Positions 3,483 through 47,884 of a stretch of DNA of 64,000 nucleotides are shown here, piece after piece. Location of the stretch: contig NC_068985.1 of NCBI RefSeq assembly GCF_001194135.2, positions 31,734,348 through 31,798,347 on the forward strand, read 5' to 3'. This stretch comes from Octopus bimaculoides (Eukaryota). Position 1 is the stretch's first letter, and every line of letters starts with the position of its first letter. The notes beneath the pieces were generated by a model. It had not been told where the DNA came from, ran no database searches, and was given only the letters and a program-made list of their open reading frames with translations. The translations under genes and the position numbers were made by a program.

Positions 3483-4652
3483 TACACAGAGCAATTCAGA
3501 AGTTCTGAGACTTTTTTTAGGAGAGGCAGTTACTGTAATTTTAGTATATCATTACTATATATCTAATAAGCTGACCTACCAATTTTTTAAAATTATTATT
3601 CCAGATTGAAGGAAATGGCTGTAACAGCACTTTGAACAAGCACTACTGAACACTGCTTGTCACAGCTGATGAAGCTTGTTATGCAATAAAGTTTCATCTT
3701 AAACTGAGCAAAAATGCTACTAAGATTTATGAAATGCTCCAGACTGCTTATGAATTAACTAGTAGGAGCTGAGCATTTGCTTTTCACTGGCACGAGAGAT
3801 TTAAGGATGATAGAGAAGAGGTGAAGGACGTTAAGAGGTGTGATGAGAGGTGTGGACATCAGAACATCAGAGCTGGTTGAGAAAATTCGCAATTTTCTAG
3901 ATGAAGACCATCATGTGTCTATAAAGACAATATGCATACAGTTTGGACTTGTTGTGGCAATTGTGCACAGAATTATGCATGAAGATCTGAACATGCACAA
4001 AATTTGTGTAAAGTTTGTTCCCAAAATGCTCAATGATGAACAGAAAGAAAGATGTATTGGTAACAGCAGGGAAATCGTTGAGCTCATTACCTACAATCCA
4101 AGAGTTCTTGAATCTCTGGTGACCTGTGAAGAAAGTTGGATCAGTTGTTATGATCCAGAGACCAAGAGACAGAATGACCAATGGAATCATCGTGGCTACC
4201 CCAGGCCCAAGAAGACCAGGCAAAGGAAGTCCAATGGGAAGCTTATGATGGTCCTCTTTTGTGACAAGAGCATCATCTACATCTACTGGCTTCCCTCTGG
4301 CCAGACAATCAGTGTTCTGAAGGAGTTCAGGAAGAGATTTGATTGCAAAAGACCAGAGCACCTGCACCAGGACAATGCAGTTCACAATTCCATCCTGGTA
4401 ACCAACAACTTGACAGAGATGGGCATCAAAATTGTCCCTCACCCTCCCTACACTTCAGACCTTGCTCCCTGTGATTGTTGGCTGTTCCCCAAGCTGAAAG
4501 AGAACCTTAGGGGCAGTTGTTTTGACGGCATTGAGAAGATAAAGGAGGTCCTTGATACCTTCACTATGGAGAACTTCCATGGGGCCTTTACAAAGTGGCT
4601 GGAGTACTACAAGTGCATTGAAGTCAGAGGCTCCTACTTTGAAGGAAATTAG
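3483..4652 (+). mobile_element. Mariner (irritans/Himar1-like) transposon, defective transposase
   Basis: N-terminal HTH remnant (YAIKFHLKLSKNATKIYEML, about 3680) plus a 270-aa ORF 3840-4652 with FVPKML, LVTCEESW (first catalytic D replaced by E), HQDNA and HPPYTSDLAPCD. Putative 5' TIR near 3483-3512; no 3' TIR seen. Confidence 0.85.
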
Positions 4653-28849: not shown

Positions 28850-29377
28850 GTCATAGCAGCACTACCACATTTCTTTAATAAAATTTGTTTTCCATCTAGC
28901 ATTGAATAGTAACATAACTCTGCTTAATTTTTCATCTTCTCAATCATTTCATCAGTAATCACTTGGTTTTTTTATTGTCCTACAGAGTTTCTTGTTTTAA
29001 CTATTCATCATTTACTCTTCACTACTTTCAACTAGAATTTTAACCTTCAGCTTTGTTAAAACTGTTGACCTCTGCCTTAAGTATTTATAACTTTCTTGAT
29101 AATGAAATATATTTTTCTCATTTGTTCATTTATTTAGATATCTCAATCTTATCATGGTTACATAATACTGTATAAATGACTTACCTTAAAAAAAATTTAC
29201 CATATTTGCATAAATTAAGAGATATATGTAAACGTGAATAATAATGTTTCAAAGGTCATTTCAAGCATTTACCCTCTTGTATTTATATTAATCAGTAAAA
29301 GAAGAGTCCTGTAAGAGATTATACACGTTTTCTGTTTAAACATTATTTGGTAACATTTATCATTAAAAAAAAAAATT

Positions 29378-29538
29378 ATGGCTGACCCTCTTCCTCGCAA
29401 AATGGAAGCTCTTGTGAAAACATCTGAGAAAGAATCATTTGAATTTAAAACTTTAGATTTACCAGAACCTGTCGGGGATGAAGCACTCATAAAAATTGAA
29501 GTTGCATCACTGTGTGGATCAGATATTAATTTATACAA
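29378..29538 (+). CDS. tdh: tdh-like exon 1
   Basis: MADPLPRKMEALVKT...ASLCGSDINLYK; donor AA|GTAAGT. Confidence 0.85.
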
Positions 29539-29904
29539 GTAAGTTTTTGCTGAAATGAAAATATTTTACTAATATAACTTCATATCATTTTCAAAATCAA
29601 TCTGCTATTTTTATTGTTTATTTTTTATTTTGTTTTGTTTTTGTTTTTATAAGGCTATATATTCAAAATAATGTATATCAACTTTTATATACTCTTTGAA
29701 ATAACATTGTCACAAAATAAGATATTTCCTATTTGTCATCATTGTCTTCTTCTTCTTCTTCATTGTCATTATCATCATCATCTTCATCTTTTCCACCATT
29801 ATCAGTGCTCTTGCCATGGGCATCATCTTACATTTAAGGGAGCATTACAAATTGCAATGGAATCTTCAAACAACACTAGAATCTTTACTATTCTTTAAAC
29901 ACTG

Positions 29905-29966
<62 letters not shown>

Positions 29967-32239
29967 AATATACATACACACACATGCATTCATGCACACA
30001 CACTCACATGTGCAAAAACACATGGGTTCAACATTCATATGCACACAAGCAAACATATTTCATATTCAATATCAAAGAAATTACAATCTGTATTTTGGAA
30101 AGATAGTCAAAATTAAAATGGAACGGAATAATACAAGAAAATTATTATTTTTCCATGAGAGGATTTTTATGGACTTAGAGAAAGAAAAATACTAAAATTA
30201 TATTAATTCTATGACCTCATCCATAATTTCCCAACAGCTTTTCCATATATTGGTTTTTAACTTTAGCACAGGACCAACAATTTTGGGGGTGCAGGTAAGT
30301 CAATTACATTGACCTCAGTGCTCAACTATTATTTATTTTATCAACCCCAAAAGGATGGAAAGCAAAGTCTACCTCAGTGGAATTTGAACTCAGAATATAA
30401 AGATGGATGAACTGTCAATAAACATTTTGCCTGGTGTGGTAACAATTCTGCCAGCTCAGTATTTTAACTTTTCTACACATTAAGTATAAGCTTGACTGTG
30501 TGATAAGAGACTTGCTTCCCAATCATGTGGTTTTGGGTTCTGTCCCCTGCATAGCAAACTTGAGCAGGTGTCTTCTACTTTAGCCCTGGGCTGACCAATG
30601 CCTTGCAAATGGATTTGGTAGACAGAAACTAAAAGAAGCCGGCGAGCTGGCAGAAACGTTAGCATGCCGCGCGAAATGCTTAGCGGTATTTCGTCTGCCA
30701 CTACATTCTGAGTTCAAATTCTGCCGAGGTCAACTTTGCCTTTCATCCTTTCGGGGTCGATTAAATAAGTCCCAGTTACACACTGGGGTCAATATAATCG
30801 ACTTAATCCGTTTGTCCTTGTTTGTCCCCTCTGTGTGTAGCTCCTTGTGGGCAATAAAGAAATAAGAAACTGAAAGAAGCCTGTTGTGTGTGTGTACGCA
30901 CACGCGTGTGTGTGTGCACGTGCATGCGTGTGTGTGTGTGAGAGAGAGAGAGAGAAAGAGTATGCGTGTGTGCTTTGACAACCAGTTTTGGTGTATTTAC
31001 ATCTTGTTATTTAGTAGTTCAGCAAATATTAAGTACTTGAAGCAATTTGTTCCACTAAACCCTTCAAGGCAATACCCCAGCATGGCCACAATCCAATGAC
31101 TGAAAGAAGTAAAAGATAAGAGATATTCTTTCACAAATTTGTATTATATTGAAATTTGTATTATAGTAAAAGAGATTATATAGGCTATGATTAATTTATC
31201 TTCTGACTGTATAAAGATGTCTGAACATTCTATATTCTCATTGCCATTCAAACCACAAGGCCTTATTTATGCTCTCTTGGCAGAATTTGAAATTCCCTAT
31301 AGATTAGATATTAGAAAAGGTAATTGAAAATATTTTTTGAAATGCAACTTCCAATGTGTTAAGCTTCCATTTATTTTTCATGATATTTCTCCTGTATTTG
31401 AACATTGATGTCCTGCATACTTTTTACCCTTGAAATTATAGTCCAAAACTGGAATTGTCAAATATCCCATTAGTGTTTTTAATATAAGGCTTACTCTTCT
31501 CCTCTTATATCTTGCTATTTGTTAGCCAATAGATTTCTGCTTGATTTTGATCCAAAGGTTTTCGTTGTTCACACTTTCAGGATATTTTAATGGTTGAGAT
31601 ATTCCTTAGGCATCTGTTCATAAATGTTTGGAGCTTTCAAAGGATATTTGCATTCATTTGCCATATTTTGGAATCATATAGCAGGACAGATTTAATGTTA
31701 CTAAAGAAAATTCTCAGTTTAATAAGTTTGGACAGAATCTTTGCCTTCCAAACATGCTTTATGAATTTGAAGGACATGACTTACTTTTCCAAATCTCACT
31801 TCAATGTCCTCCTCTACACTTCCAGTTGCAGATATAATGCTTCTTAGATATAAGAAACATTTCACTTCATTCAACATATGGTTTTTCAATCATTATTGAG
31901 CCAAAATTTGCTAAATCACCTCTCTTGTATTTCTTTGAAAGAGGTGATGCAACAAATCTTCATATTTTTACATTTAAATTTTTACATTTACAATATTAAT
32001 TTTATTGTTATTAATGTCAGTTATGTTTCAGCTTTGAAGAACGCAGGGCTGAAGTATTTCCTGACTCTGAAGAGACATCTTAATCTTTATTATACTAGTT
32101 TGGCAATGTTATAAGTGTGGGAATATCATGAGTGATCTTCAAATTGTGAGGTTTGGGATTTACAGTGATTTGTGAATTTTAATTGTATCATAAATATTAT
32201 TTTAATATTATTATTATTGTTATTATTATGATGACGATA

Positions 32240-32293
<54 letters not shown>

Positions 32294-35200
32294 TTGATCT
32301 TGTTGTTGTTGCTGCTGTTGTTGCTGTTGTTGTTGTTGTTAAAAACTAACACTGAACACATTGTGCCGCAAACAGAACAGAACTCTGCACAGTTGCACTG
32401 CAGGCAAATAACAGCAATCGAGACAATCAAAGTCACGGGATCAAAACTAAAATCACAACATTCCCTGCCCCCAAGAAAAAAGAACAAATTAACCAACAAA
32501 ATGCAAAATACAAACATAACCATGAGCCAATCACAACATAATAATGAGGCATTTCATAAGCGTAACACATCATCAATCATGAATTTAACCTATCAGGAAC
32601 TTTTTTGTTCTGGATGAATGCCAGTGCAAAGTAGTTTGAGGTTCTGGTTCTTGAGCTGGTGTAGGTGGGACAGAATCAGTCATGGTATCTGAAAAACCAC
32701 CACGGTGTTCATGCACTTGAATAGGATTAGTGTCAGCAACATCAGTTTGATCCTTATTTGACTGATACTCCTCAGTCATTTTGCCAGTGAACACTGAATC
32801 ACTAATGGACACAGTACTTTCACATCCATCTGGGTACTGCAACCTCTCGTGGTTAGGGTTAATTTGTACCAGTTGGGCTTCATCTAATAACGGATCATAC
32901 TTATTGTGTACATGTCATTTAACAAACACTTTGTCAGGTCCTTGAATTAGCCAAGTAGGAATGGAAACACTACACGTAGAATGTCTAGGAAATTTAAAGA
33001 ATCTCTCATGCGGAGTTTCAATAGTTGCCGTGCATAATAATGAACGTTGCAAATGTAAAACTTCTGGAACCATGACTTCCCACTGAGAAACTGGTAAATT
33101 TCTGCTACGTAAGGCCAATTTAATGTAATTCCATATTACTCCATTATACCTTTCACATTGAGCATTTCCATGAGGATTGTACTCAGTAGAATGAGTAATC
33201 GCTATACCCCTATCATACAGAAATTGTTTAGCATTATCACTATGAATAACAGCAGGAAATCCGAAGAAAAGATTAAACAAAACCTTCAAATTACTAATAA
33301 CAGAATGAGCACTAGTATCAGTACATGGAAAAATAAATGAAAAATGTGAATACTCATCCACAAGAGTCAAAAAATAATGGTTCTTTGACACTTAAGATAG
33401 GGGTCCTTTAAAACCAACACTCAATCTTTCAAAAGCTTAAGTAGATTTAATTACTGATGAAACAGATGTTTTAGTAAAGTGAGGCTTCACCTCACAACAT
33501 ATTACACAATTGTTAGTTATACGCTTTACATCATCTACAGAGTATGGTAAATTCTTAACTTTAATATAATAACACAATCGTGTAATCCCAGGATGACATA
33601 CCACTGTATGAACACGGTACGGTTCATTATCAGTTGTAGATGCACAATAGGTACGTGATGAAGCATCAGATGCAACATAAAACTTATCTTAATGGTAAAT
33701 GATATCAAATTTATACTGGGCTAGTTCAATTCGCCAATGCGTAATCTTTTCGTTTTTAGGTTTACTGCGCTTTTGACAATTAAACATAAAAGCAACACTG
33801 TTTTGATTATTTATTAGTGTGAAGTTATGTCCAAGAAGAAAATGAGACCATTTCCTCACAGATTCCACAATCCCTGTCACCTCTTTTTCAATACAAGAAT
33901 AACGACGCTCACTTGAGTTGAGGGTTCTTGAAAAAAATGCAACTGGCTTTCCATTTTCATGCAAAATGCCAGATATAATTGCCTTCAATGTGTCTGTTTC
34001 TATTGAGAAAGGAAGGCTTTCATCAATCACTTTTAAGGTAGCATTTGCTAAATCATCTCATAAAGTTTTTAAACTTGACAAAGCTTGTTCACTCAAAGGA
34101 AAATATTTTGTATCAACCAACGATTTTATCTTGTCAGAGAATTTTGGAATCCATTTGGAATAATACGCAAATAGACCAACAATTTGACTCAATGCTTTGT
34201 GGGTAATAGGAATAGGTAGTTCTAGTAAGGGTTTTACCTGGTCAGGGTCAGGTTTCAAGTTACCATTTTGAATTTCATAGCCAAGCAATCAAATCAGTGT
34301 AGTGCTGTAAATGCATTTGACATCATTAAAAGTTAAATTACAGTCTTTAGCAACTTGAAGAAAATGTTTTAAATTTTGATCAGCAACAATTGGAAAGTAA
34401 TAAGTTGCATATGAATTTTTGGGTATCCAATGACTATTTACAAGAATGTTGGGTATTAACAAAATTACATGTGTGCAGAGAAACAGCTATGTTTGTACAT
34501 GTAAGGGGAATAGATTATTCAGAAATACATATCAAATGAGGATAGGCTGTACCTTTGGCTGAGAAAAACAAAACAAATGCAAAAGGAAGTTGTTAGGACA
34601 TGTCTGAGGATGCCAAGCTTTACAGAAGAGATGAGGTACAAGAATTTTGTCTAAAACATTGGTGATGATTACAGAGGTGGTGGTGTTACTGTGCTGGTGG
34701 TATTTGTACCATTAAACTGTTTAATCAGAATTTTTAAGATATATTTTTATAAATATAACAAATAAAGCTATTTTATATTCAGTAGACAATGTATAATTTT
34801 ATTTATTCATTTATTTTTTTTATTTCTTTAGGTGGAATGAAGTTGCAAAACTCCTAGCCAACATTCCATTTACTCCAGGTCATGAATGTGCTGGTACTGT
34901 AGTGAAATGTGGCCCATCATCCACAGTCATCATAGGCCAACGTGTCACTGTAGAGAACCATTTTTTTTGTGATCACTGCTACCAATGTAAACATGGGTTA
35001 CAAGGTATCTGTAAGAACATGGGGCAATATGGTCATGGAAACAAAACAATTTATGGAGGATGCTCCCAATACAGCATTGTACCTTCAAAATATTTATACT
35101 GTTTAAAGACTAATATATGTAAATATAAAATTATCTTATTTTTGTTTACTCTTTTACTTGTTTCAGTCATTTGACTGCGGCCATGCTGGAGCACCGCCTT

Positions 35201-38200
35201 TAGTCGAGCAGATCGACCCCAGGACTTATTCTTTGGAAGCCTAGTACTTATTCTATCGATCTCTTTTGCTGAACCGCTAAGTTACGGAGACGTAAACACA
35301 CCACCATCGGTTGTCAAGCAATGGTGGGGGGGGACACACAGACATGCAAACACACATACATACATATATATACATATATATACGACGGGCTTCTTTCAGT
35401 TTCCGTCTACCAAATCCACTCACAAGGCTTTGGTCAGCCCGAGGCTATAGTAGAAGACACTTGCCCAAGGTGCCACGCAGTGGGACTGAACCCGGAACCA
35501 TGTGGTTGGTAAGCAAGCTACTTACCACACAGCCACTCCTGCGCCTAGAAACTCTTATTCTTTTATACATTTCAGCCCTGGTGAACTTCATAATCTAGTT
35601 GGTGATAAGAGAACTAATGAAGATATTGTATTCATATAGTGCATTAGTCCTCAACCTTTTGTAGCTCAGTGCACCCTTTCACTGAACGATCTTTTATAAA
35701 TGGCTCCTCCCCATGTTTTACCAAAAAAAAGAAAAAGGCAAAAAAAACACCAAATAGTTGATTGTTTTAATCAAACATAAAAAAATTTTGCACTAAGATT
35801 TATAGTCTATATTTCTTATGCATTCTAACCCAGTATATGCTTCCTTTTTATTAGGTCATCACGTATGATATTTTGTAGTAAGGTATATGGTAAACTTTGA
35901 CAGCTGCTCATTTTGCGCCATTATTATATTTTGACAATCTTTATTTCTTGTTAGGAATCTGACACATCTATTTCTTTATTCTAACTCATTTTGTGCTTTA
36001 TAAAGTATTTATAAATCGTTTTTTGCTATTTTTGTTTAGAGATGGATAAGTCGGAAATTTGTACACTTTTGAAATATGAGTTCTTTCTTGGAAATACAGC
36101 ATCACAGACAGCTCAGAATATTAATGGAGTGTTTCATTCTAATGTTATTACACAGCAGACAGTATCAAATTGGTTTGCAAAATTTTGTTCTGATAACTTT
36201 GACCTCACAAATAGGAAAAAAATTTAATTTCGATGATGCTGTAAAACAGGTCTTCCAAGATTTCACTGACTCTAGATTGCCAGGCTTTTACAGTTCCAGG
36301 CTGGACAAGCTACCGCTGAAATGGAAAAAGTGTATTGACAATATGGGTGCATACTTTGATGAATAAAACTATTCCTTGTGTTTATACAACATTAGCAAAC
36401 TTATTTTCTTTTCTACAAATTTCATACTTGACAACCTAATAGATATTTGTCGAGATTAATGCTCTTTATGCTAAATTTTAATGAAAATTACAAAAGAATG
36501 TGAAGTTTGATATAATTATATTATATTGGCCCTAGTCATATTATCAGTTATATTTCTGCTCACTGATAATACAATGTCCTATTTGTATCCTAATGCCAAC
36601 AAAGATTTTTTTTATTGTAAATTCTTTTTACTATTCAGCTTTCCTTGAGGCTACACTTTTAGAGCCACTTGGAGTGTCTCATCAAGCAATAGAATCTTTA
36701 GAAGTGCAAAATGAAGATGTTTTGATTATTGGATGTGGAGCAATTGGTTTATTAGCAACATCTGTGGCAAAAGCTCTTGGTGCCAACAGGTAAAATTTAT
36801 TATCATTCAACCATGGTAGTAATTGAATATATTCTTAAGTCCACCATTTCATCAATCGCAGCAGCTTCCAAGCTTCACCACTAATTCAGTTCTCAACTAA
36901 ATTGCAAACTGGTAACAGCTTTAAAGAGAACATCCCCTCAGCTACACTTTGGCATAAATAGTTTGAGATTTGGTTCAGTAGAAAAAGGTTACATCAAAAT
37001 ATCTGCAACCTCAGGGGGGGGGGGCANNNNNNNNNNNNNNNNNNNNNNNNNNNNNNNNNNNNNNNNNNNNNNNNNNNNNNNNNNNNNNNNNNNNNNNNNN
37101 NNNNNNNNNNNNNNNNNNNNNNNNNNNNNNNNNNNNNNNNNNNNNNNNNNNNNNNNNNNNNNNNNNNNNNNNNNNNNNNNNNNNNNNNNNNNNNNNNNNN
37201 NNNNNNNNNNNNNNNNNNNNNNNNNNNNNNNNNNNNNNNNNNNNNNNNNNNNNNNNNNNNNNNNNNNNNNNNNNNNNNNNNNNNNNNNNNNNNNNNNNNN
37301 NNNNNNNNNNNNNNNNNNNNNNNNNNNNNNNNNNNNNNNNNNNNNNNNNNNNNNNNNNNNNNNNNNNNNNNNNNNNNNNNNNNNNNNNNNNNNNNNNNNN
37401 NNNNNNNNNNNNNNNNNNNNNNNNNNNNNNNNNNNNNNNNNNNNNNNNNNNNNNNNNNNNNNNNNNNNNNNNNNNNNNNNNNNNNNNNNNNNNNNNNNNN
37501 NNNNNNNNNNNNNNNNNNNNNNNNNNNNNNNNNNNNNNNNTTATATTCTAAATTTACTTTTTAAATTTCAAAATTAATTAAAAGGGATTTTTCATAAATC
37601 AAATTTATATTAATGGGATATAGTAATTTTAACTTGTGTATATCTGATATGCTTTTATAATTACTGTTGTATTAAATAATTATTGATAGATCTAGATTAG
37701 TAGCAGTCAGTGCTATTATTCCCAACTCAAAATCTAGGTTACTTAAGGTGAGCCTAGTAACTGATGGTTTTGGGGTCATGCTTGTAACTTTTGGTGAGCC
37801 ATGGAAATCCCTGCCATTAATTTGGTGTGGATGGGTAATATCAAATAACTCAATCACAATATATATTTAAATTAAACTTGAAAAAAATTGAAATATCATC
37901 ATCACTTACATGGAAAAACTGAAATGTTATCTTTCAGTATTTTATAAGTTAAAATCTTAAATTATTAATTGACACATTATTAATTATCTTATAACAGCAA
38001 TGCCTGGAAAAATCATGGATTACATGAAAAAATGCAAGCATGAAAATAATAAGTAATTATGAAGACAAAAATATTAATATGATAGCAAGCAATTACAAAG
38101 GAAAATTCATAAAATTAATTTCTGTAATCTTTCTAATAAAGTATCAATCAAATATTAAGCCATTAAAGGCTAATGAAATAAGATAGATAAATGCACACAC

Positions 38201-38769
38201 ATACACACACACAGAGACAGACACACAAAATAGTAATTACATGGAAAAATGGGAGCATGAAAAGATTATAAAAGATTATAATCTTAAGATTATATACCTG
38301 GAAAAGTACAGGACAAGTTATTACACCTGGAAAAGTATATGACAAGCTATTACTTCTAGTAAAGTAAAGAATAAGAAACTTTTTACTTAAAATATTGCAG
38401 CTAAAATTAAAATTTGAATATTAAAACTTATTTTATTATAATTTATAAATAACACTATACTTATTGAAGTAGAATTTGGTTAATTTACCTTAAATACAGA
38501 AAAAAGTGACTAGTTAGACAAACTTACAAATTAAATGAGCATTTTTGTATAATAAATTTAAAAGATGAAAATTGATAAGAGTGATAAATTAGAAGAACTG
38601 GCATTCTTTGCGGCAATATTTTAAGTAAAAAGTTTCTTATTCTTTACTTCACTAGAATAGCTTGTCCTATACTTTTCCAGGGTTATAATCTTAAGAGTAT
38701 TACTTTTCATGCTCCCATTTTTCCATGTAATTACTATTTAGTGTGTCTGTCTGTGTGTTCATGTGTGTG

Positions 38770-38806
<37 letters not shown>

Positions 38807-41800
38807 ATTTATCTATCTTATTTCATTAGCCTTTAAAGGTTTATTTGATTGATACTTTATCAGAAATTAATTTTATGAATTTTCCTTGGTAATTGCTTGC
38901 TATCATATTAATATTTTTATCTTCATAATTACATATTATCATAATTTTCAACATTTCTAATAGATACATCTCAATGTTTGCTTCAAAACATCAAATATCT
39001 TTGCTTATTTATTGTTAACAACAGCTAGAACTGTTATGTTTTATCTACCAACATATATAGCTGGGATGTAACAGCATTAACAAGATTGGAAAAAATATCT
39101 TTCCCCTACCAAGTCCAATCTAATTATAATTATTATCTAGCATGTATCATAAATTTGTGTCTCTCACAAATTGGATGGCTAGCAGTGGACCCATTTATAA
39201 GAAACTTCTTTAAGAAAATACTGTCTATGCCCATGCTATCCATATCAACAATGTCTTTTATAGTTTCATCTAGATTTTAACATTTTTCCCCTAATTATTC
39301 ATCATCCTTTCTCTTTTCTCTCCATATTCTGCTTTGGCAGTTCAAAGACACTCAACTGCCAAGTTTCTTAACACACACACACATTTGTGTAAGAAATGAT
39401 GATTACATGAATTTTGAGGATATTAGTGGCTGTTGCTCTTTAGCCCCATTCAATGCTGATCAAAGCATCTGGTCATGACCTTCCAGTTTTTTTAGGAGTC
39501 CCTAGAACTACATTATGTGAAACAGTGAGGTGTTATTTGAAAGTGATATGGTTGCAATTTCAAGCAGGTTGGAAAGCCATCTTGAAGCTCCTCTCACTGA
39601 CTCAAGGAGAACAGAGATAATTTGTGTAAGCTATACTGAATCCAGAAAAAATATGAAACGGTAAAATTACAGTGGTGTGCAGTGAAAATCAGTATTCCAC
39701 ATGGTGCACTTGTGTTTGGAGACAAGTTTACATTTAACTTATAAACAGGAAAAAATAAACATTAAATAAAATATTGGTTTTATTTTCAGAGTTATCTGTA
39801 CAGATGTGATAGATGAACGTCTACAACTAGCAAAAAAGATGGGAGCAGATGTAACTGTCAACTCTTCAAACCAGGATCTCAAAAATGTTAGTGTTTTACT
39901 TTATACTTAGACTCAAATATTTCAAATTTCTGTGGCATGAAGTAAGAGAATTTCAGAATTGAGAAATCAGGTTATTTAATAATAAAAAACCCCTAAAAAG
40001 TCTTTACTGAGTGAAGTTATAACAATGAGCTAATATAGAAAATGCAATTTCTCTCTGTCTGTCTGTCTCTCTCTTTTGTTAAAGATTTTGTTGGGAGGAA
40101 AAGACCATCGGAAGCTGTTGAAATTCCATACTGATTGGTTGATGTTCAGCTTAAGAAGCTGCAAGTCAAAGTATGCAGGAAAAACAGGGTGGAAAAAGAA
40201 TTCTGGAATTGACATTCTGAGGAGCAAAGATGAAGCAGAATAGTTAGTGTGAGTCGTAGAAGGAGAAACACAGAACAGGTGATAAGATGGGGAAAGATTT
40301 GTGCGCTCTGGTGAAAGTAATATGCAACTAGCAAGTTCTATGTGCAAGAGGTTGCAGTCTGTTGGTGAATTCTTACCATTGAACTAGATGACTTTCTTTT
40401 TGATGAAATCTGGGATGCTTGTAGGTCTGCAATTTAGTAACATCTTTCCAAACATGAGAGTAGTAGTCTTTTGTGAATCTCGCCTGAGTTTTGTAAGTGT
40501 TTAAGCTGAAGTATTTTTTAGCTCTGAAGAGGAAAAAGTTTATGCTATTTTACAAATTTCTCACTAGGAATGATCATCAGATATTAATGTTTGAAATTTT
40601 TATCTGTTTGAGAGTTTTAGTTCTGTTATCCAAAGCTAGAATTAAAGCAAATAGAGATAATGGGTTCATTAATTTATTTGATCATTTTATGTGTTTTACC
40701 ATGCTAGCATGGGTTAGATGAACACATTAATAAAACATTGTTTTACAGCCAAATGACTTTCTTGCTCTCCAATCCTTACCTGTTTTTCAAGTGAGGAAAC
40801 TTTCATTCCATTAAATGTTTAAAGCACAGAGAAACTGAATGATTTACTAATAAGGATACGTCTGCTATTAATTCTTACATTTCCCGTTAATTCTTACAGC
40901 TTCATTTTCTGTTTAAGCAATTCTTAACATTAACTTCTTAATGCCTCTTCTACTTTTTCCTAGCCCCCATACTTACCGAAAACATCAATTAAAACTTTTT
41001 CTAATGCAATTCCCCTTTCTTCTGCCATTAACACAACCAGTTGCTCACACACCTTACAGTTTCTCATTCAAACTACATAATAGGCAGAATTGTCAGATTG
41101 AGACAGTAGGGTTTTTTGAGGGAGATTTGGCTGCTATTTCTACCAGGTCTACCTACCATGTAGAGACGATAGTGGATTTATGGAAAAGAAATTTAACATA
41201 TCCTTTCCATAAATCAACTATCGTAAAAATTTTCTACAATGACCATACATTTTCTATGTATGTGTGTGTACCTTAAGAAACGTCAATCATCACAACACAC
41301 ACCTTCACTCACTCTCTCTTTCTCTCTCACATACACACACACAAGCACGCATGCACACCCACACACACACACGTCCATTTCATATATCTTCTTTCAATTT
41401 CTGCTCTCTGTAAATAAAATTTTTATGGATACAACTGCTTACAAAAATAGGGATTAATGTATAATTTCTTTCTATGTTCATAATTAAATCAATGTTTTAA
41501 TGATTAGACAGAGATCCAACAGAATAGCTCTCAGAAACAGACTACATGTAAATTCGTTCTTCACAACTTCTGAAGCTGTTTTCTGACAGGGGTGGGGTCA
41601 GGAAATTTTCATACAGCTGGAGGCTTCAATTGAAACAGGGGACCTGAAATGATAAGGTTGAGAAACGCTGTTATAGATTATGCCTTACCGAAAATGATCA
41701 CAGCCACATCATCCAAACAGACCAGGTGAAACCAGGCTTAGCTGCTAGTGATCCAATATTTTTAAGGGAGAGGAAATAAAGAATGATAAAATTTGTGCCT

Positions 41801-44800
41801 TTCTAAAAAGTGCTAGTAGCACAAATGAAGTGAAATGGCATTGCCTAGAGATTGAAATCATCCCATTGATACACAAGACATATTTTCTTAGCATCCATGC
41901 ATCATATATAGGAGACACATTCCCAATTTTTTTATACCGGGACTTGTCAGTGATCCTTTTCTTCCAGCCAGTGGTGTTTTAGATTTTTGGAAGGGTTGGG
42001 CCACTAACAACAAAGTTCTTTTCATCATTGGCAGCTCACCTTACTGAGGTGTCAGGTGATGCGTGTGAAGGTACTTGGCTGTTACAACACCTTAGACTCA
42101 CCATCATCTGTGGTAATGCCATGAGCATGTTGGCTGGCTTCAGTAGATTCTGTTGAACCTTGTGGTGAGCAACTAATTGAGGCAATTGGTGTTGAATTGA
42201 TGCTTTTCCCCCCTTTCTTCCTCTTTTCCTTTCATTCTTTGCTCCTGTTTGTGTTTTCTATGGTTTTGGATTTGTATTTTATTGTGGTTTTATATTATAT
42301 ATGTATCATATACATATGTGTTATATTCAAAAAAATATAAAAACCAAACTTGGGACTTATGAAGAGAAAGTTTTACATTACTTAGAACATATGAAACAAA
42401 GATTGAAAACAAACATGGACTTTTAGAACAAAGTTATGAAAATAACTTGTTTCATAAGCTTTATATGGTTTACTTTCATGTCAGTGATACAGGTGTAAAT
42501 TGTAAAATCAAAAAGAAAAATTAGTATGACAATTTTACAAAGTGAATATCATTTCTGTTGTTCCAGTTCATTATGAATTTAACAAATGATGATGGTATTA
42601 ACCGAATTTGTGAATGCAGTGGTTCAACAATTATGGTGAATTCCATGTTTGGTATGCTCAGAAAGGGTGGTCATATTGTCATGGTTGGTTTGCCAAAAGA
42701 ACCAATCCACATTGAAAATACCGTTCAAGACATACGTAAGTGGTAATGTTTCTCACTAATTTTAATTTTTTCACAACAGGCAGAGGCATAGCTGTGTGGT
42801 TAAGAAGCTTGCTTCCCAACCATGAGATCTTGGGTTCAGTCCCATTATGCAAAACCTTGGGCAAGTGTCTTCTACTATAACTCCAGGTCAACCACAGCTT
42901 GTGTGTGTGTGTGTGTATATATATATACACACACACACACAAAGCTTTGGCTTGGCTGCAGTCCAATGACTGAAACGAGTAAAAGATGATAAAATAGAAG
43001 ATATTTTATAATTGAAACCAAACTAGTCTATTTCATTTTTATTGGCTTAATCTAGAGGGAAAGAATGTGTCCATATCTTCATTGTTCCTCCAAGACCAGT
43101 AGTATCAATTGCTTTAGAAATGTTGAAAGTTGCAGGAAAAATATTAGCAAGGAAGGAATTCAAGAGAACCAATGTTCTGAGGAAGGAGTACAGTGTGAAA
43201 CCTGTGAAGATGAACACAATATGAATGGTGTATATGGAAGTGAGGAATATCTGGGTGGAAGTGATACAAAGCCAGCCAACTCTGTGAAGCAGAGGTCACT
43301 GTAGTAGCAGCAATGACAATGCTCTAGATTTTGCCCCTTATATTCATCAAGCTCTTCAGTCTCTCTCTCTCGCTCTCTCACAGTAGGTATACACTCTGAT
43401 CTTTAGAAACAGATTACAGTATGTCCCATTCCCAAGAAAGATAACTCCACTGATTCTTTCAGCTATTGCACTTGCAGTATTTCAAACATAATAGAGACAG
43501 CCATTAATAGTGAAGTTCTGACATCTCGAATCTTTCTCTCTTTTAAACTAGTACCAGTACAGCATCTATAACGCTAAAAGATTCACTGGAAACCTACTCT
43601 TCCATGTTTCTCAATGGGGCTCCCATTTAGAAAAATTCAATGGAAGTAATATTCTTATCTTAAATATCAATAAAACTTTTGAAGTGTCTGCCATGTGGAT
43701 CCTCTACTGAAATTTCACATCCATGAACACCTCCAGATTGCACCACCAGTGTATTGACAGAGTTCTGTTCCACATTCAATCAACTCAACGCCTACTCTTA
43801 TGCAGATGATACAACCCTTCATTCCTCCTTAACACTTCCCAATACATTATTCACATCCAACCCAAAACCCCACATGTGAAGCTTACACTAACTCTATGAA
43901 TGGAGACCTCCACAGCATTTTCCAAGGGACTATGCCCATCTTATCTCTTACAACAGAAGAAGAAAAAAGAAAAGAAAAAGGCATTCATATTAAGTAAACA
44001 TTGTTACATCTTACTTCTCTCAAACATGGGCAGTACTCAACTAGAGCTTTCGTGATTGCTCCACATATTAGGTCTCACTATCACCAAGGATTTTCTCTAT
44101 GAGAAGTGCATCCTTAGCTAGAACCACATCCCAAAGACTGACCATTCTCTTCATGATCAAAAATACTTCAGTTTCCAACAGTTGCTGACACTCTACAAAG
44201 CTCAATTGATGCCCACAACAGAAAGGTGCTGCTGTTACACAAACATTCCTGACTGTATTCAGAGAAAGAACACTTGAATGATTGGCCTAAAATCACTATC
44301 AGACATGCTCCGACTTCTGATCAACAGGTATACTGTCTTCTCTCTGACTTTTCTACATTTGCTATAATGGCCCTTATAGCCTGTTTCTCATAGCAGGCTG
44401 GTCTTGTGCCACTTCCACTCAAGCACTCCAAATCAACTCTTTTATCCTCCTCTCAACACTCATGCTGTGTCCAATCTCTCAGTCTAATCCCAACACTTAG
44501 TCCTGAGCCTCCAGAACATTGGCTCTCTAGAATTTCTCCCTTGCAGGTATCAGCTTGGAACAATTTAAGTAAAACAAATGGCATCAATCTCACCAGTATT
44601 TGAGAGTGAATCTGCAAGGTTATGGACACAACACTTTACCAACTTTGTATTGTACTTTTTTTGTTATTTAAATAATTATTTTTATTACAAGTTGAATTCG
44701 CAAATATTATAAATTAAATTAGCTTTTTCTAAATTTTCGTTTTCAGTTTTTAAATCTTTGACTCTAAAAACAGTACATGGTAGACGTATATTCCATACTT

Positions 44801-44943
44801 GGGAATGCTGTGAAATGTTGGTGTTTAGTGGTCAAGTTGATGTTAAGCCACTGATTACACATAAGTTTCCAATGAGAGAATTTGAAGAAGCATTCAAGAC
44901 TATCTTCAGTGGAAAGTGTGTTAAAGCTATCATTGAACCCTAA
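29378..44943 (+). CDS. tdh: Zn-dependent MDR dehydrogenase resembling prokaryotic-type L-threonine 3-dehydrogenase; 6 exons, 353 aa
   Basis: Exons 29378-29538, 34832-35118, 36639-36789, 39790-39886, 42567-42735 and 44747-44943 total 1062 nt; all GT-AG with compatible phases (2,1,2,0,1). Motifs: CGSD..YKWNE, GHE, CDHCYQCx7C, LLEPLG, IGCGAIG, ICTDV, IFHTW, ITHKF. The MDR family is secure; the substrate is inferred. Confidence 0.85.
30480..31115 (+). mobile_element. SINE family A copy interrupted by a SINE family B insertion (30641-30864)
   Basis: 17-bp TSD agaaact(a/g)aaagaagcc at 30624-30640 and 30865-30881. Confidence 0.8.
31430..31900 (-). mobile_element. RTE LINE RT C-terminal fragment
   Basis: Minus translation SVLLYDSKIWQMNANIL*KLQTFMNRCLRNI resembles RTE VLLYGSETW...KLQTFxNRCLRRIL. 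Confidence 0.6.
32200..32340. repeat. Compound (ATT)(GAT)(GTT) trinucleotide microsatellite
   Basis: Directly visible. Confidence 0.9.
32335..34440 (-). mobile_element. Gypsy/Ty3 LTR retrotransposon 3' half (RT end, RNase H, integrase, PPT, partial 3' LTR), degenerate
   Basis: LLGYEI...GLFAYYSKWIPKFS (RT). KPVAFFSRTL..ERRYSCIEKE (RNase H). LTLVDEYSHF...IHSDNA...YNPHGNAQCERYN (integrase). PPT GGGGGCAGGGAA (32461-72) is followed by TG at 32460. Confidence 0.85.
34832..35118 (+). CDS. tdh: tdh-like exon 2
   Basis: WNEVAKLLANIPFTPGHECAG...FFCDHCYQCKHGLQGIC...LKTNI. Confidence 0.9.
35150..35546 (-). mobile_element. SINE family A, near-consensus copy just downstream of the tdh exon 2 donor
   Basis: CpG-rich, near-identical in reverse to 48179-48750 and 56375-56860. 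Confidence 0.85.
35851..36439 (+). mobile_element. Non-autonomous mariner deletion derivative with TIRs and TA TSD
   Basis: TA|ttaggtcatcacgtatga ... tcatacttgacaacctaa|TA. Transposase N-terminus (MDKSEICTLLKYEF) is joined to the C-terminus (LPLKWKKCIDNMGAYFDE). Confidence 0.8.
36639..36789 (+). CDS. tdh: tdh-like exon 3
   Basis: SFLEATLLEPLGVSHQA...IIGCGAIGLLATSVAKALGANR. Confidence 0.9.
38041..38950. repeat. Long inverted repeat/foldback element (~350-bp arms, ~210-bp spacer)
   Basis: 38041-38401 is the near reverse complement of 38610-38950, including an internal (CA)n/(TG)n tract. Confidence 0.85.
39790..39886 (+). CDS. tdh: tdh-like exon 4
   Basis: VICTDVIDERLQLAKKMGADVTVNSSNQDLKN; donor GTTAGT. 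Confidence 0.88.
42567..42735 (+). CDS. tdh: tdh-like exon 5
   Basis: FIMNLTNDDGINRICECSG...GGHIVMVGLPKEPIHIENTVQDI. Confidence 0.88.
42780..42990 (+). mobile_element. SINE family A, internally deleted copy
   Basis: Family A head plus tail. Confidence 0.7.
44747..44943 (+). CDS. tdh: tdh-like exon 6 (stop TAA 44941-43)
   Basis: LFKSLTLKTVHGRRIFHTWE...PLITHKFPMREFEEAF...KAIIEP*. Confidence 0.9.
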
Positions 44944-45028
44944 ATTGGAATACCATTGGCCTCAATCTAAATATTTTTTAAGTTTTGGTTTTCACTAAAG
45001 ATTGCTAATTGTAATAAGTTGAATTTAT

Positions 45029-45034
45029 AATAAA
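45029..45034 (+). terminator. Candidate polyadenylation signal for the tdh-like gene
   Basis: AATAAA 85 nt after the stop; a second AATAAA lies near 45178. Confidence 0.5.
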
Positions 45035-47884
45035 GCAAAAATTTCATTGGTATTTAATATTTCACTTATAAAAAACATGTTGCTTTCCTGAAAGGACCAT
45101 ACCTATTCCTCTAAAATATGTTGATATGTTTATCACCTGGAGAGCATTCTGAAAAAAAATTGTACTACAATTGTTCAATAAAGTCTAGTTACTCTTTATC
45201 ACTTGTCAAGCTTGGAATATTGCTTATGATTTTATCTATGTCATTTTTACTAACACTTCACAACACATTCTCAGTTAAAATGTAAGAGAATTGGACTCAA
45301 TATTGTAACCATATGTACATGTTTGCATAAAAGTGTATATGCATGCACATATGCATGTGTGTGTCTGTTCATGTAAACAGGATTACTTCTTAACCTGTTG
45401 AAGAGTATATTAATACTGAACTCATATGTAACCCTGCATAGTTTAAATATGGCAAATATTTATCACACTTTTGACAAAATATTCAGAGAGTGGTAGAGGA
45501 GGAGAGTGATGAATAGTAATAGAGATAGACAATGGGAAGAATAAGCAATGTATGTCAATAAGAAGTGGTTTTGAGAAGAGGGAGTGATAACTGACAATAC
45601 AGAAAGGGTGATGGTAGGATTTATCATGTACTGCCATCCTCGGTTATGCTAGCAGAATAATAGTGACTATAAGAGAAGATGAGAGGAGAGAGGATAAATT
45701 GGTTCCTAGAATATTAATGAATTTCTTTGCATTACTAGCAAGTATAGTGCTATTTGCTATATAGATACAGCAAATAATTTTTACAAGTAATTTTGAAGCA
45801 AATGAATTTTACAAACGGTTTTGTAGCAAATGATATTTTTACAATAATAACATATTGAGGAAGAGAAGAGAGTAACAGCTTAAAGATATTAGAATAATGT
45901 GAAAGATAAAAAATTTGTGAATGCCCACTTCTAACTAAAGAAACTTATATTGATAACAGCAATTATTGAAATTGCTTCAGTTATTCAAGGTCCAGCTCGA
46001 TTCAACCATTTGTAATTTGGTAGTTGAGAAGACTGATTGACATTGTAATTTTAACAGATTTAGATTCATTAAAAGTCAACTTCAGCAGCAAACACATGTT
46101 TACAACATGTTCTGCTTGATGTCAATCACTGATTTTCCCTTAATTTTGTAAGGGAAAATGTCACGGAAGTTCTCTTCTTCCATGTGTTTATTTATAGTTC
46201 TTTAGAAGACAGCATCAACATTGGTAACACCAAACTATATTCAGGTAAATTGATTGCTGCAAACACCATAAAAGTCTTATCACAGTCAAAATGTTCAGAA
46301 GGTCATATACACTTTTACGATCAAAAATTGAGAATATGTGATAAATTGTTAAACTGTTCCCCATAGTCTCCATGCTTGGTAAAGGGTATAAATGTTTATT
46401 GTAGACAAATAATTAATGCACATTTGCTTCTTGTTATGCTTAAGAGTCATCTCTTACACTTGCACACACCATGTTCTATAATCCCTTCAGAAAATAATCA
46501 CTGAATTTCTTAAGGTATGAACTCTTGATCAGCAGGACTAAACTTCCTGGACTGAGTAGCTATAGGTTCACATCTTTCTTTATGTTTGCAAATAACAATG
46601 GCTTGTACATTTTCCTTGTGGCCACACTACATACAGAATTATTTACAAAGTTTGAAATCTTGAGCTCAGATCTATTTCCTCTGTATACTATTGTAACTGA
46701 GAACATTGTTTAAAAATCTGTTTTGAGAATCACACCACTAAAAAGATCCTTAAAAATGCCCAGACAAGTGTTTGGATATGGCGTATCATTTAAGCAAAGA
46801 TCATCAGTGCACTTGTTTGCTCATCACAGAAGCAGTAACTAAGGACTTGTCAGTGAGAAATAGGTTGAATAAGTAACCAAACTTACTGGTTACCAAAAAT
46901 CTGATAAGACATGAACCTTACTTTCCATTAACTGTGATTTTGCAGTAAAAGAGTGTAAACACCAAGGAGCAGCAATTGAGAAGTCACAAAGAAATGACGT
47001 AAACCATAACTTTCTTCTTCATCAGGCAAACTCTTACCCAGTGACATTTTTCCCACATGAGAAGTATTCACTTTACTCATGGATAAATATTAGAGCCACA
47101 AACCCAGCAACATTTCTTACTTATTATCCCTGCAAGTGCTACATCTTTAAAAGGAGCATCAGCTTGCTGAAGAATACATAAAGGCTTATGAGCTTTTTCC
47201 ATATACCCTGATATACTGCTACAACCATAGAACAAAGTTGTTGAAATGTCTCAGAGTTGTACTGTACAAGAACCAAAGCTCTAGTTTGATCATAACTGTG
47301 AGAGTTTCACAGATGTTGGCATATACATCATCATCATTTAATGTCCATTGTCCATGATGGCATGGGTTGGACGATTTGACCAGGGCTGGCAAGCTGGAAG
47401 GCTGCACCAGACTGGAGTCTGGTGCAACCTTCCAGTCTGATATCTGTGTATGACAATTCATTTACGAAGGCACTCCTTACCAGCTACTCATGATATTGTT
47501 CAGTTGCTGCACTTTACAATGTGCAATTTTTACTGAGATCGTACAGAAATTGAAGAAAATCATCTAAGACTTTACCAAGTACGTGACACCTTGTACCAAG
47601 TTATTACTAGCAAATAGATTTCCTTTTTTATATCACCTTTTCTGATGTTGAAATTACTGTATCAAAGTCTATAGTATCCACTGTCACTGACACATATTTT
47701 GTTTAGTAGTGTAGTTTGTCAAGTGTTCTTTCACCGCATTCAGCAATGAAATTTAATTTCCAAAAGTTCTTAACCAGTCAACAGCTACTGAGTTTGCATC
47801 TACATCAAATTTGTCAAAGTAGACTATGCATTTTATGATGTTGGTTTATAAGGTGAATAAATTAATATATATATATATAGACTG

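What the first reader, a model, noticed from the sequence alone, without database searches (positions are those of the whole stretch)
29378..44943. Intron-containing, prokaryote-type Zn-MDR threonine dehydrogenase-like gene in an animal genome
Seen: a complete 353-aa ORF over six GT-AG exons with consistent phases. It has catalytic Zn ligands (C46, H71/E72, E in LLEPLG), a structural-Zn CxxCxxCx7C, a GxGxxG Rossmann motif with Asp (NAD preference), and no obvious mitochondrial presequence. Known: characterised animal TDH is a mitochondrial SDR/epimerase-type enzyme, whereas Zn-MDR Tdh is the E. coli/Bacillus/Pyrococcus type. The YKWNE (cf. YEWNEW), FKSLTLK..GRRIFHTW (cf. FKGL.IKGIYGREMFETW) and ATLLEPLG (cf. 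ATLQEPLG) motifs look closer to Tdh than to sorbitol dehydrogenase. Inference: either an old horizontal acquisition that has since gained introns or an ancestral gene lost in vertebrates and insects, possibly a cytosolic route of threonine or amino-alcohol/polyol oxidation.
Basis: partly seen in the sequence, partly recalled or inferred. Interest (0 to 1): 0.75.

Follow-up and report, generated by a model that had tools for sequence, protein, structure and literature searches.

The report
Octopus threonine-dehydrogenase-like zinc enzyme gene
This is a real, spliced and expressed octopus gene for a zinc-dependent dehydrogenase that most resembles bacterial threonine dehydrogenase; it is already annotated, its animal-wide family is already published, and nobody has measured which substrate it acts on.

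Summary
Six GT-AG exons (29378-44943, + strand) encode a 353-aa Zn-MDR protein. RNA contigs confirm all five junctions, and the mRNA has a 110-nt 5'UTR, an AATAAA signal and a poly(A) tail. The N gap (37027-37540) lies inside intron 3, and exon 3 joins exon 4 directly in the mRNA.

The protein is 100% identical to the NCBI entry 'L-threonine 3-dehydrogenase [Octopus bimaculoides]'. Orthologues at 48-62% identity occur in molluscs, brachiopods, annelids, cnidarians, sponges, tunicates, malacostracan crustaceans and Capsaspora. A 2026 paper (PMC13576164's neighbour in this report, PMC13390645) already describes this clade and poses the same question, ancestral gene or HGT.

The protein is nearer to Tdh than to sorbitol dehydrogenase in sequence, HMM score and predicted fold. 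It nevertheless scores below NCBIfam's Tdh cut-offs (300 vs 380 bits), lies outside the subclade of validated TDHs, and has its own invariant active-site changes. L-threonine oxidation is therefore an inference, at about 50-55%.

Four introns are shared across Lophotrochozoa, which excludes a recent transfer. None of the 12 sponge/cnidarian intron positions is shared with the octopus gene. That is unexplained, and I found no report of it.

Verdict: an ordinary, already-known gene with an untested function.

The parts
29268..29377 (+). 5'UTR, contiguous with exon 1; in-frame stop TAA at 29351-29353
   Evidence: The RNA contig of run X1 starts at 29268 and lies on the genome without a break; sequence read.
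29378..29538 (+). Exon 1 CDS (M1 to the first 2 nt of K54); holds catalytic-Zn Cys46 and Ser48
   Evidence: donor GTAAGT; the letters beyond the exon end match the start of exon 2.
29539..34831 (+). Intron 1 (5293 nt), seen only in octopus among the genes compared; holds LTR-retrotransposon pol fragments on the - strand
   Evidence: rve at 32915-33391, RT_RNaseH at 33689-34030.
34832..35118 (+). Exon 2: H71/E72, N96-H97, the structural-Zn Cys4 (C100, C103, C106, C114) and the Q-Y-G-H-G loop (119-123)
   Evidence: contigs end at 34832 and 35118; overhangs are exon 1 and exon 3.
35119..36638 (+). Intron 2 (phase 1, after the first nt of codon 150); position shared with Lottia, Capitella and Lingula
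36639..36789 (+). Exon 3: E158 (LLEPLG) and GxGxxG (181-186)
   Evidence: its 151-nt length fits contig positions 559-709.
36790..39789 (+). Intron 3 (phase 2, codon 200), which contains the assembly gap 37027-37540; position shared across Lophotrochozoa
39790..39886 (+). Exon 4: D205 (NAD+ preference)
   Evidence: overhangs are the end of exon 3 and the start of exon 5.
39887..42566 (+). Intron 4 (phase 0, after codon 232); shared with Lottia and Capitella
42567..42735 (+). Exon 5
42736..44746 (+). Intron 5 (phase 1, codon 289); shared across Lophotrochozoa
44747..44943 (+). Exon 6 coding part: H299-G300-R301 and the ...FHTW motif; stop TAA at 44941-44943
44944..45198 (+). 3'UTR; AATAAA at 45177-45182; poly(A) addition near 45196-45198
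   Evidence: (contig end and A-run overhang).

Best explanation
The locus is the single-copy Octopus bimaculoides gene already annotated as L-threonine 3-dehydrogenase. It is a normally spliced, polyadenylated nuclear gene for a 353-aa Zn-dependent medium-chain dehydrogenase.

Shown here:
- The protein has the two MDR domains, a complete catalytic zinc site (C46, H71, E72, E158), a structural Cys4 zinc site, and a Rossmann GxGxxG with Asp205, which points to NAD+.
- It has no N-terminal extension and no PTS1-like C-terminus, so it is most probably cytosolic.
- It belongs to a eukaryotic clade (Holozoa plus a few protists) that is the sister or neighbour of prokaryotic Tdh and Tdh-like enzymes.
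- Its intron structure was inherited vertically at least since the lophotrochozoan ancestor.

Inferred:
- It oxidises the 3-hydroxyl of L-threonine, or of a closely related small hydroxy-amino or hydroxy-acid, by hydride transfer to NAD+ at the zinc site.
- The product, 2-amino-3-ketobutyrate, would be made outside the mitochondrial GCAT compartment. It would therefore tend to decarboxylate to aminoacetone and go on to methylglyoxal and D-lactate.
- That route would fit the reported observation, which I know only second-hand, that threonine is the best precursor of D-lactate in octopus tentacle.
For: - Gene model and expression.
- Identity to the annotated protein, on a 127-Mb chromosome record.
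- Domains.
- Best curated family is Tdh (300 and 287 bits; the next family scores 188).
- The five best solved-structure hits are all TDHs by sequence (193-212 bits) and by fold (TM 0.88-0.92; model pLDDT 92.9).
- It keeps Tdh-specific residues that E. coli's non-Tdh paralogues lack: K14, W55, H97 (E. coli His90), G161, G300-R301, T306.
- Clade breadth and monophyly (bootstrap 97).
- Introns shared across Lophotrochozoa.
- No close prokaryotic donor. The best prokaryotic identity is 38-41%, and a motif scan of 185,579 species genomes found only five loci at 32-34%.
- Published tree and the link to octopus threonine metabolism: PMC13390645.
Against: - It scores below both Tdh equivalog cut-offs (380 and 458). 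Validated TDHs score 413-648. The non-Tdh proteins YdjJ and YdjL also have Tdh as their best HMM, at 189-218 bits.
- In the NJ trees it lies outside the subgroup holding all five validated TDHs, and the deep nodes are weak (bootstrap 25-66).
- The whole clade lacks the His of the TDH 'C-G-T-D-x-H' proton relay (octopus N51). It replaces the TDH-invariant GNA with GV[AS]H, and it has an invariant Q-[YF]-G-H-G-x-x-T loop with a 3-residue insertion next to the substrate pocket.
- PbfG is 32.5% identical to E. coli TDH, about as close to it as the octopus protein is (33.6%). PbfG is a 2-hydroxyethylphosphonate dehydrogenase (PMC13576164).
- No enzyme assay of any member of the clade was found.
- I did not test whether octopus also has the SDR-type mitochondrial TDH, which could account for the reported threonine flux.
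Confidence: 0.55

Rival explanations
1. Same gene and same fold, but the eukaryotic clade is a separate MDR family whose physiological substrate is not L-threonine. It could be another small hydroxy-acid, amino alcohol, diol or phosphonate. 'Threonine dehydrogenase' would then be a best-hit annotation error.
For: - It scores below the equivalog cut-offs, while non-Tdh paralogues also hit the Tdh HMM best.
- It lies outside the validated-TDH subclade.
- The clade has its own invariant pocket residues: N96, H122, V162 and H299 stand where B. licheniformis TDH has T94, a GVD-type loop, N157 and T293.
- The proton-relay His is lost.
- PbfG is a precedent for a TDH-like enzyme with another substrate.
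Against: - His97, the equivalent of the E. coli His90 specificity residue, the G-R...T-W motif and W55 are kept. These are exactly the positions that separate TDHs from E. coli YdjJ, YdjL, GatD and IdnD.
- TDHs are clearly the nearest solved structures.
- Octopus tissue is reported to metabolise threonine to D-lactate (cited in PMC13390645).
Confidence: 0.35
2. The lophotrochozoan gene, including the octopus copy, did not descend with its introns from the sponge/cnidarian-type gene. It re-entered the genome as an intron-less copy, either a retrogene or a lateral transfer from another eukaryote or a bacterium, in a stem lineage. It then gained four new introns, and a fifth in the octopus lineage.
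For: - None of the 12 intron positions shared by Actinia, Amphimedon and Sycon is found in Octopus, Lottia, Capitella or Lingula.
- A third, disjoint set is shared by Homarus and Clavelina, and the Styela copy is intron-less.
- Near-coincident positions are no more frequent than chance.
- From my own knowledge, lophotrochozoans normally keep most cnidarian intron positions.
Against: - The protein tree is broadly congruent with animal phylogeny: non-bilaterians against bilaterians, with molluscs together.
- No donor lineage is identifiable.
- Wholesale intron turnover by other means is not excluded.
- Only 11 loci were sampled.
Confidence: 0.3
3. Recent horizontal transfer from a bacterium, or bacterial contamination or misassembly in the octopus assembly.
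For: The nearest characterised enzymes are prokaryotic.
Against: - Five spliceosomal introns of 1.5-5.3 kb are filled with octopus repeats.
- The mRNA is spliced and polyadenylated in several RNA runs.
- The gene sits on a 127-Mb chromosome record.
- Orthologues with the same introns occur in other phyla.
- The best prokaryotic identity is only about 40%.
Confidence: 0.01
4. It is the octopus sorbitol/polyol dehydrogenase (a SORD orthologue).
For: It has the same superfamily and fold. One tunicate orthologue is labelled 'sorbitol dehydrogenase-like' in UniRef.
Against: - SORD scores 127-142 bits against 193-212 for TDHs.
- Identity to human SORD is 28%, against 35% to archaeal TDH.
- In the NJ tree, SORD, LAD and YdjJ group apart from the octopus clade.
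- The published tree agrees.
Confidence: 0.02

Closest known systems
Metazoan 'MDR-type TDH' clade: NCBI 'L-threonine 3-dehydrogenase(-like)' of molluscs, cnidarians, sponges, crustaceans and tunicates; Ciona KY21.Chr9.903 in PMC13390645
   Same: The window's protein is a member. It is 100% identical to the annotated O. bimaculoides entry and 48-82% identical to the others. It has the same length, no presequence, and the same invariant motifs.
   Different: Nothing differs at the family level. Octopus has one extra intron (codon 54, phase 2) that Lottia, Capitella and Lingula lack.
Bacterial and archaeal Zn-MDR L-threonine 3-dehydrogenase (E. coli Tdh; P. horikoshii 2DFV/2D8A; T. kodakarensis 3GFB; T. 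thermophilus 2DQ4; B. thailandensis 5KIA)
   Same: - Same fold (TM 0.88-0.92) and both zinc sites.
- Same NAD+-type Asp.
- His97 corresponds to E. coli His90.
- The Y-x-W-N/D-E and G-R-x-x-F/W-x-T-W motifs are present.
   Different: - Identity is only 32-35%.
- It scores below the NCBIfam cut-offs.
- It has no relay His (N51).
- GNA is replaced by GVS.
- It has a 3-residue insertion with an invariant His122.
- It has no kbl partner in an operon, being eukaryotic.
- It lies outside the validated subclade.
Animal mitochondrial SDR/epimerase-type TDH (for example mouse TDH)
   Same: Only the proposed reaction is the same.
   Different: The fold is unrelated: Pfam finds ADH_N and ADH_zinc_N, not an epimerase/SDR domain. 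There is no presequence. I did not test whether octopus also has the SDR type.
Sorbitol dehydrogenase and polyol dehydrogenases (human SORD 1PL6, whitefly ketose reductase 1E3J)
   Same: Same Zn-MDR superfamily, of similar size.
   Different: The scores are lower and they branch separately in the tree.
PbfG, a TDH-like 2-hydroxyethylphosphonate dehydrogenase (PMC13576164)
   Same: It is about as far from E. coli TDH (about 33% identity) as the octopus protein is. It shows that TDH-likeness does not fix the substrate.
   Different: PbfG's catalytic zinc uses Cys45, His66 and Cys166. The octopus protein keeps the TDH-type Cys/His/Glu ligands plus Glu158.

Membership tests
Zn-dependent medium-chain dehydrogenase/reductase (MDR) superfamily | GroES-like catalytic domain plus Rossmann zinc-ADH domain | tested here: met
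   PF08240 scores 80.5 bits and PF00107 scores 105.9 bits, both above gathering scores.
Zn-dependent medium-chain dehydrogenase/reductase (MDR) superfamily | Catalytic Zn ligands (Cys, His, Glu) and a structural Cys4 lobe | tested here: met
   C46, H71, E72 and E158, plus C100, C103, C106 and C114. All are invariant in 26 orthologues.
Zn-dependent medium-chain dehydrogenase/reductase (MDR) superfamily | GxGxxG with an acidic residue about 20 residues downstream (NAD+ rather than NADP+) | tested here: met
   G181, G183, G186 and D205 are invariant. The cofactor preference itself was not assayed.
L-threonine 3-dehydrogenase, MDR type (NCBIfam NF003808 / TIGR00692 equivalogs) | Whole-protein score above the curated cut-off | tested here: not met
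   300.1 against 380 bits, and 287.3 against 458 bits. Validated TDHs score 413-648 and non-Tdh YdjJ/YdjL score 189-218.
L-threonine 3-dehydrogenase, MDR type (NCBIfam NF003808 / TIGR00692 equivalogs) | Groups inside the clade of biochemically validated TDHs | tested here: not met
   In the NJ trees it sits on the Tdh side of the SORD/YdjJ split, but in a different half from all five validated TDHs. Deep bootstraps are 25-66%. No ML tree could be run.
L-threonine 3-dehydrogenase, MDR type (NCBIfam NF003808 / TIGR00692 equivalogs) | TDH-invariant and TDH-specific residues around the active site | tested here: inconclusive
   It keeps 57 of 94 TDH-invariant columns (YdjL also 57, YdjJ 48). Of 23 TDH-specific columns it keeps K14, W55, H97, N116, G161, L178, G300, R301, T306 and G344. 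It changes T to S at 48, W to V at 58 and V to H at 122, along with others. The relay His of the TDH 'C-G-T-D-x-H' motif (octopus N51) and the Asn of TDH GNA (octopus V162), which E. coli paralogues share and so are not among the 23, are also changed.
L-threonine 3-dehydrogenase, MDR type (NCBIfam NF003808 / TIGR00692 equivalogs) | Functional coupling with 2-amino-3-ketobutyrate CoA ligase (kbl/GCAT) | not tested
   No kbl-like sequence is in the window or beside the five nearest GTDB homologues. I could not search for octopus GCAT elsewhere in the genome.
L-threonine 3-dehydrogenase, MDR type (NCBIfam NF003808 / TIGR00692 equivalogs) | NAD+-dependent oxidation of L-threonine to 2-amino-3-ketobutyrate | not testable with these tools
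   This needs an enzyme assay. No assay of any clade member was found.
Eukaryotic (holozoan) MDR-type TDH-like clade | Monophyly with metazoan and Capsaspora orthologues, and shared signature motifs (ENH[FY][YF]C, Q-[YF]-G-H-G, GV[AS]H, HGR) | tested here: met
   Bootstrap 97 for the clade including protist relatives. The motifs are invariant in alignment A1. The 50%-identity representative search collapses the clade onto a single representative.
Eukaryotic (holozoan) MDR-type TDH-like clade | Shared intron positions with orthologues (vertical descent) | tested here: met
   Four positions are shared with Lottia and Capitella, and three of them with two Lingula paralogues. None is shared with the cnidarian/sponge or the crustacean/tunicate orthologues.
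Sorbitol dehydrogenase (SORD) | Closer to SORD than to other MDR families | tested here: not met
Animal SDR-type mitochondrial TDH | Epimerase/SDR fold and a mitochondrial presequence | tested here: not met
   Pfam finds only MDR domains. An in-frame stop lies 24 nt upstream of the ATG in the expressed 5'UTR.

The most novel reading that the evidence does not exclude
The eukaryotic 'TDH-like' clade is a distinct cytosolic dehydrogenase family with its own conserved pocket: N96, H122 in an inserted loop, V162 and H299, with no relay His. Its substrate is something other than L-threonine. The three disjoint intron sets (sponge/cnidarian, lophotrochozoan, crustacean/tunicate) record repeated re-insertion of intron-less copies, or animal-to-animal transfer, rather than simple vertical descent.
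Probability: 0.2. Interest if true: 0.55.

Novelty: already known. Interest (0 to 1): 0.25.

Why it matters
Animals are usually said to degrade threonine through a mitochondrial SDR-type TDH coupled to GCAT. A second, unrelated, apparently cytosolic Zn-MDR enzyme is present in most marine invertebrate phyla and absent from vertebrates and insects. If it really oxidises threonine, it would give those animals an extra route from threonine to aminoacetone, methylglyoxal and D-lactate. That could explain old octopus biochemistry.

The gene and its distribution are already recorded, so the value here is limited to three points:
- The octopus gene model is solid and the assembly gap is harmless.
- The 'threonine' label rests on weaker evidence than the annotation suggests.
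- The intron positions pose an evolutionary puzzle that bears on the published claim of arthropod-to-tunicate transfer, because Clavelina shares five intron positions with lobster.

Tried and rejected
I laid the exons one at a time instead.
- A motif scan of 185,579 prokaryotic species genomes found only five loci, at 32-34% identity. It gives no donor candidate. The scan is pattern-limited, so it is not proof of absence.
- tblastn with E. coli Kbl found no kbl within 3 kb of those five loci or anywhere in the window.
- The Capsaspora locus was not on record, so its intron positions are unknown.
- The amphioxus 'novel ADH' preprint (10.1101/2022.05.18.492404) looked related. Its protein is 64% identical to an Anaerolineae protein, so it is a different MDR.
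- I asked whether near-coincident intron positions between the sets are slid homologues. Five or six pairs were seen against 2.4-3.5 expected (P about 0.09-0.13), which is not significant.
- A loose literature search was uninformative. A tight one found only the 2026 GBE paper. Akagi and Ohmori 2004 is not held, so I cite it only second-hand.
- The N-terminal CxxC...CxxC motif of protist homologues P0121 and P0139 looks like a RanBP2-type zinc finger by eye. Pfam did not call it.
- No ML tree program was available. The NJ trees have weak deep support.
- I could not test whether octopus also has the SDR-type TDH or GCAT. No suitable query or listing depth was available.

Full report
1. THE OBSERVATION

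The window is AT-rich (34.5% GC) and has 12 N runs. One of them, 37027-37540, lies within the finding.

Joining the open frames at canonical sites gives six exons on the + strand: 29378-29538, 34832-35118, 36639-36789, 39790-39886, 42567-42735 and 44747-44943. Every intron is GT...AG. The phases are consistent, and the CDS is 1062 nt, giving 353 aa and a TAA stop. tblastn of the protein back onto the window finds only these six pieces, so the gene is single-copy within the window.

2. THE GAP AND EXPRESSION

- Contigs stop exactly at the predicted borders. The letters that overhang are the neighbouring exon at every one of the five junctions.
- One 1427-nt contig (depth about 280) has exon 2 at 272-558, exon 4 at 710-806 and exon 5 at 807-975. 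Exactly 151 nt remain for exon 3, so the gap contributes nothing to the mRNA. It is intronic and the frame is continuous.
- The same contig starts at 29268 and is colinear with the genome up to exon 1. An in-frame TAA at 29351-29353 precedes the ATG, so there is no hidden presequence.
- At the 3' end the contigs stop at 45196-45198. An A-run overhangs there, and AATAAA lies at 45177-45182.

This is a normal eukaryotic mRNA.

3. IDENTITY

The protein is 100% identical to 'L-threonine 3-dehydrogenase [Octopus bimaculoides]'. It is encoded on a 127-Mb chromosome record (CM046605.1 of GCA_001194135.2), at the same exon spacing as in the window.

Orthologues at 48-82% identity are listed for:
- other cephalopods, gastropods and bivalves;
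- Lingula, which has three copies;
- annelids, anthozoans, hydrozoans and scyphozoans;
- demosponges, homoscleromorph sponges and calcareous sponges;
- ascidians and malacostracan crustaceans;
- the filasterean Capsaspora.

No vertebrate, insect, nematode or echinoderm appears among the 120 best hits.

A search of 1.84 billion 50%-identity representatives collapses the whole animal clade onto one representative (412 bits). The next hits are eukaryotic transcripts at 43-47% identity: an MMETSP protist, and two proteins with long N-terminal extensions. Below these come prokaryotic 'Tdh-like' proteins at no more than 41% identity.

4. WHICH MDR FAMILY

Pfam finds ADH_N and ADH_zinc_N.

| Measure | Result |
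|---|---|
| NCBIfam, best two models (Tdh equivalogs) | 300 and 287 bits; next family 188 bits |
| NCBIfam curated cut-offs | 380 and 458 bits |
| Validated TDHs (E. coli, P. horikoshii, T. thermophilus) | 413-648 bits |
| Capsaspora and Amphimedon orthologues | about 300 bits |
| Priestia 'zinc-dependent ADH' | about 300 bits |
| E. coli non-Tdh paralogues YdjJ/YdjL, whose best HMM is also Tdh | 189-218 bits |
| Solved structures, five best (all TDHs) | 193-212 bits |
| YdjJ | 152 bits |
| SORD | 127-142 bits |

An AlphaFold2 model (pLDDT 92.9) gives the same order by fold. TDHs have TM 0.88-0.92, followed by YdjJ and then SORD.

I built NJ trees of 136-139 sequences with 200 bootstraps.
- The eukaryotic clade has 97% support.
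- SORD, L-arabinitol dehydrogenase, YdjJ and YdjL fall in one group. The octopus clade and all validated TDHs fall in the other.
- The octopus clade is not inside the subgroup that holds the five validated TDHs.
- The deep nodes have only 25-66% support.

So the protein is Tdh-like and not SORD, but it is not demonstrably a Tdh equivalog.

5. THE ACTIVE SITE

Kept: both zinc sites, the NAD+-type Asp205, Ser48, His97 (E. coli His90, reported to tune specificity), W55, G161, the G300-R301 and T306-W307 motif, and K14. Several of these are absent from YdjJ, YdjL, GatD and IdnD.

Changed, and invariant or nearly so across the clade:
- The relay His of the TDH 'C-G-T-D-x-H' motif is variable (Asn51 in octopus).
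- The second Trp of W-x-x-W is lost.
- TDH's invariant G-N-A becomes G-V-[AS]-H.
- After the structural-zinc lobe there is a 3-residue insertion with an invariant Q-[YF]-G-H-G-x-x-T motif.

A docking and mutagenesis study of B. licheniformis TDH put T94, H95, N157, T293 and G294 in the pocket (PMC12276384). The octopus equivalents are N96, H97, V162, H299 and G300.

PbfG is about as far from E. coli TDH (32.5% identity) as the octopus protein is (33.6%). It is a 2-hydroxyethylphosphonate dehydrogenase (PMC13576164). The substrate therefore remains an inference. I put L-threonine at roughly 50-55%.

6. EVOLUTION

I mapped annotated proteins exactly onto 11 genomic loci and projected the introns onto one alignment.

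- Octopus introns 2-5 (codon 150 phase 1, 200 phase 2, 232 phase 0, 289 phase 1) are at identical positions in Lottia and Capitella. Three of them are shared with two Lingula paralogues. Intron 1 (codon 54 phase 2) is seen only in octopus among the 11 genes compared. The structure is therefore at least as old as the lophotrochozoan ancestor. Recent HGT and contamination are excluded.
- Actinia, Amphimedon and Sycon share 11-12 other positions.
- Homarus has eight further positions, five of which are shared with the tunicate Clavelina. Styela's copy is intron-less.
- No position is shared between the three sets. Near-coincidences are no more frequent than chance.

From my own knowledge, lophotrochozoans usually retain most cnidarian intron positions, so this pattern is unusual. 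It suggests an intron-less intermediate, either a retrogene or a transfer, in bilaterian stem lineages. I could not resolve this.

No close prokaryotic donor exists in the data searched.

7. WHAT IS ALREADY KNOWN

PMC13390645 (Genome Biol Evol 2026) lists the Ciona orthologue as an 'L-threonine 3-dehydrogenase' HGT candidate.
- It reports homologues in sponges, cnidarians, spiralians, ecdysozoans and bacteria, but in no deuterostome other than tunicates.
- It shows that the gene groups with bacterial TDH rather than with SORD or ADH.
- It states the same two scenarios, ancestral metazoan gene or HGT, and favours arthropod-to-tunicate transfer.
[quoted passage not shown] I could not read that primary paper.

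I found no biochemical characterisation of any member of the clade.

8. VERDICT

The gene is already annotated and its clade already published.

What remains open is the real substrate, the compartment, and the disjoint intron sets. Interest is low to moderate.

Noticed in passing
window 35143-35190 and onward (intron 2): A repeat begins about 25 nt after exon 2. In all four RNA runs it is covered by thousands of contig pieces, with word depths of 1e4-1e5 or more. It is probably a very abundant SINE-like octopus element. Similar translated motifs (…RRHLPKV…GTEPG…) recur in introns 2 and 5 and elsewhere in the window.
   Followed up: no
window 32915-34288, - strand (intron 1): Decayed LTR-retrotransposon pol fragments: an integrase core (rve, 32915-33391) and RT RNase H (33689-34030).
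   Followed up: partly
window 3840-4652 (+), 50066-50848 (-), 52476-53129 (+): Mariner/Tc1-like transposase fragments. The Pfam Transposase_1 DDE part was found at the first and third of these sites. Two of the three sites are interrupted by assembly gaps.
   Followed up: partly
window 22157-22507 (-) and 23424-24077 (-): ORFs that look like non-LTR retrotransposon pieces. There is a weak RVT_1 hit at 22157-22507. The 217-aa ORF has no Pfam hit.
   Followed up: partly
window 29294: One contig of run X4 carries 22 unmatched letters (CAATGAAGTCGCAGGGTTGGGG) immediately 5' of 29294. This could be an alternative upstream 5' exon or a chimeric contig. It does not affect the ORF, because the in-frame stop at 29351 lies downstream of that point.
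   Followed up: no
window 39875-39940, 42520-42596, 44680-44776: Low-depth contigs (5-12x against about 120x) in run X4 run from exons into introns 4 and 5. This is unspliced pre-mRNA or minor intron retention.
   Followed up: no
L020 (Clavelina lepadiformis) and L011 (Homarus americanus); L012 (Styela clava): The tunicate Clavelina shares five exact intron positions with the lobster orthologue (octopus-numbered codons 42/0, 70/1, 107/0, 197/1, 265/0), while the Styela gene is intron-less. This bears on the published arthropod-to-tunicate HGT proposal. Any transfer would have been of intron-bearing genomic DNA. Otherwise these introns are ancestral to both lineages.
   Followed up: partly
L010 (Amphimedon queenslandica) 501-2228 and 2310 onward: Two orthologues lie head-to-tail, about 80 nt apart (a tandem duplication). 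Lingula paralogues a and b are on one contig.
   Followed up: no
P0121 and P0139 (representative-library hits; transcripts of unknown protists): The closest non-holozoan relatives carry long, low-complexity N-terminal extensions with a W-x-C-x2-C…C-x2-C motif that resembles a RanBP2-type zinc finger by eye. Pfam did not call it.
   Followed up: partly
NJ tree: Capsaspora nests inside the sponge and cnidarian group (bootstrap 60-86) instead of branching outside the animals. The divergent Lingula paralogue c branches at the base of the clade yet has the lophotrochozoan introns, so these placements are probably long-branch or NJ artefacts.
   Followed up: no
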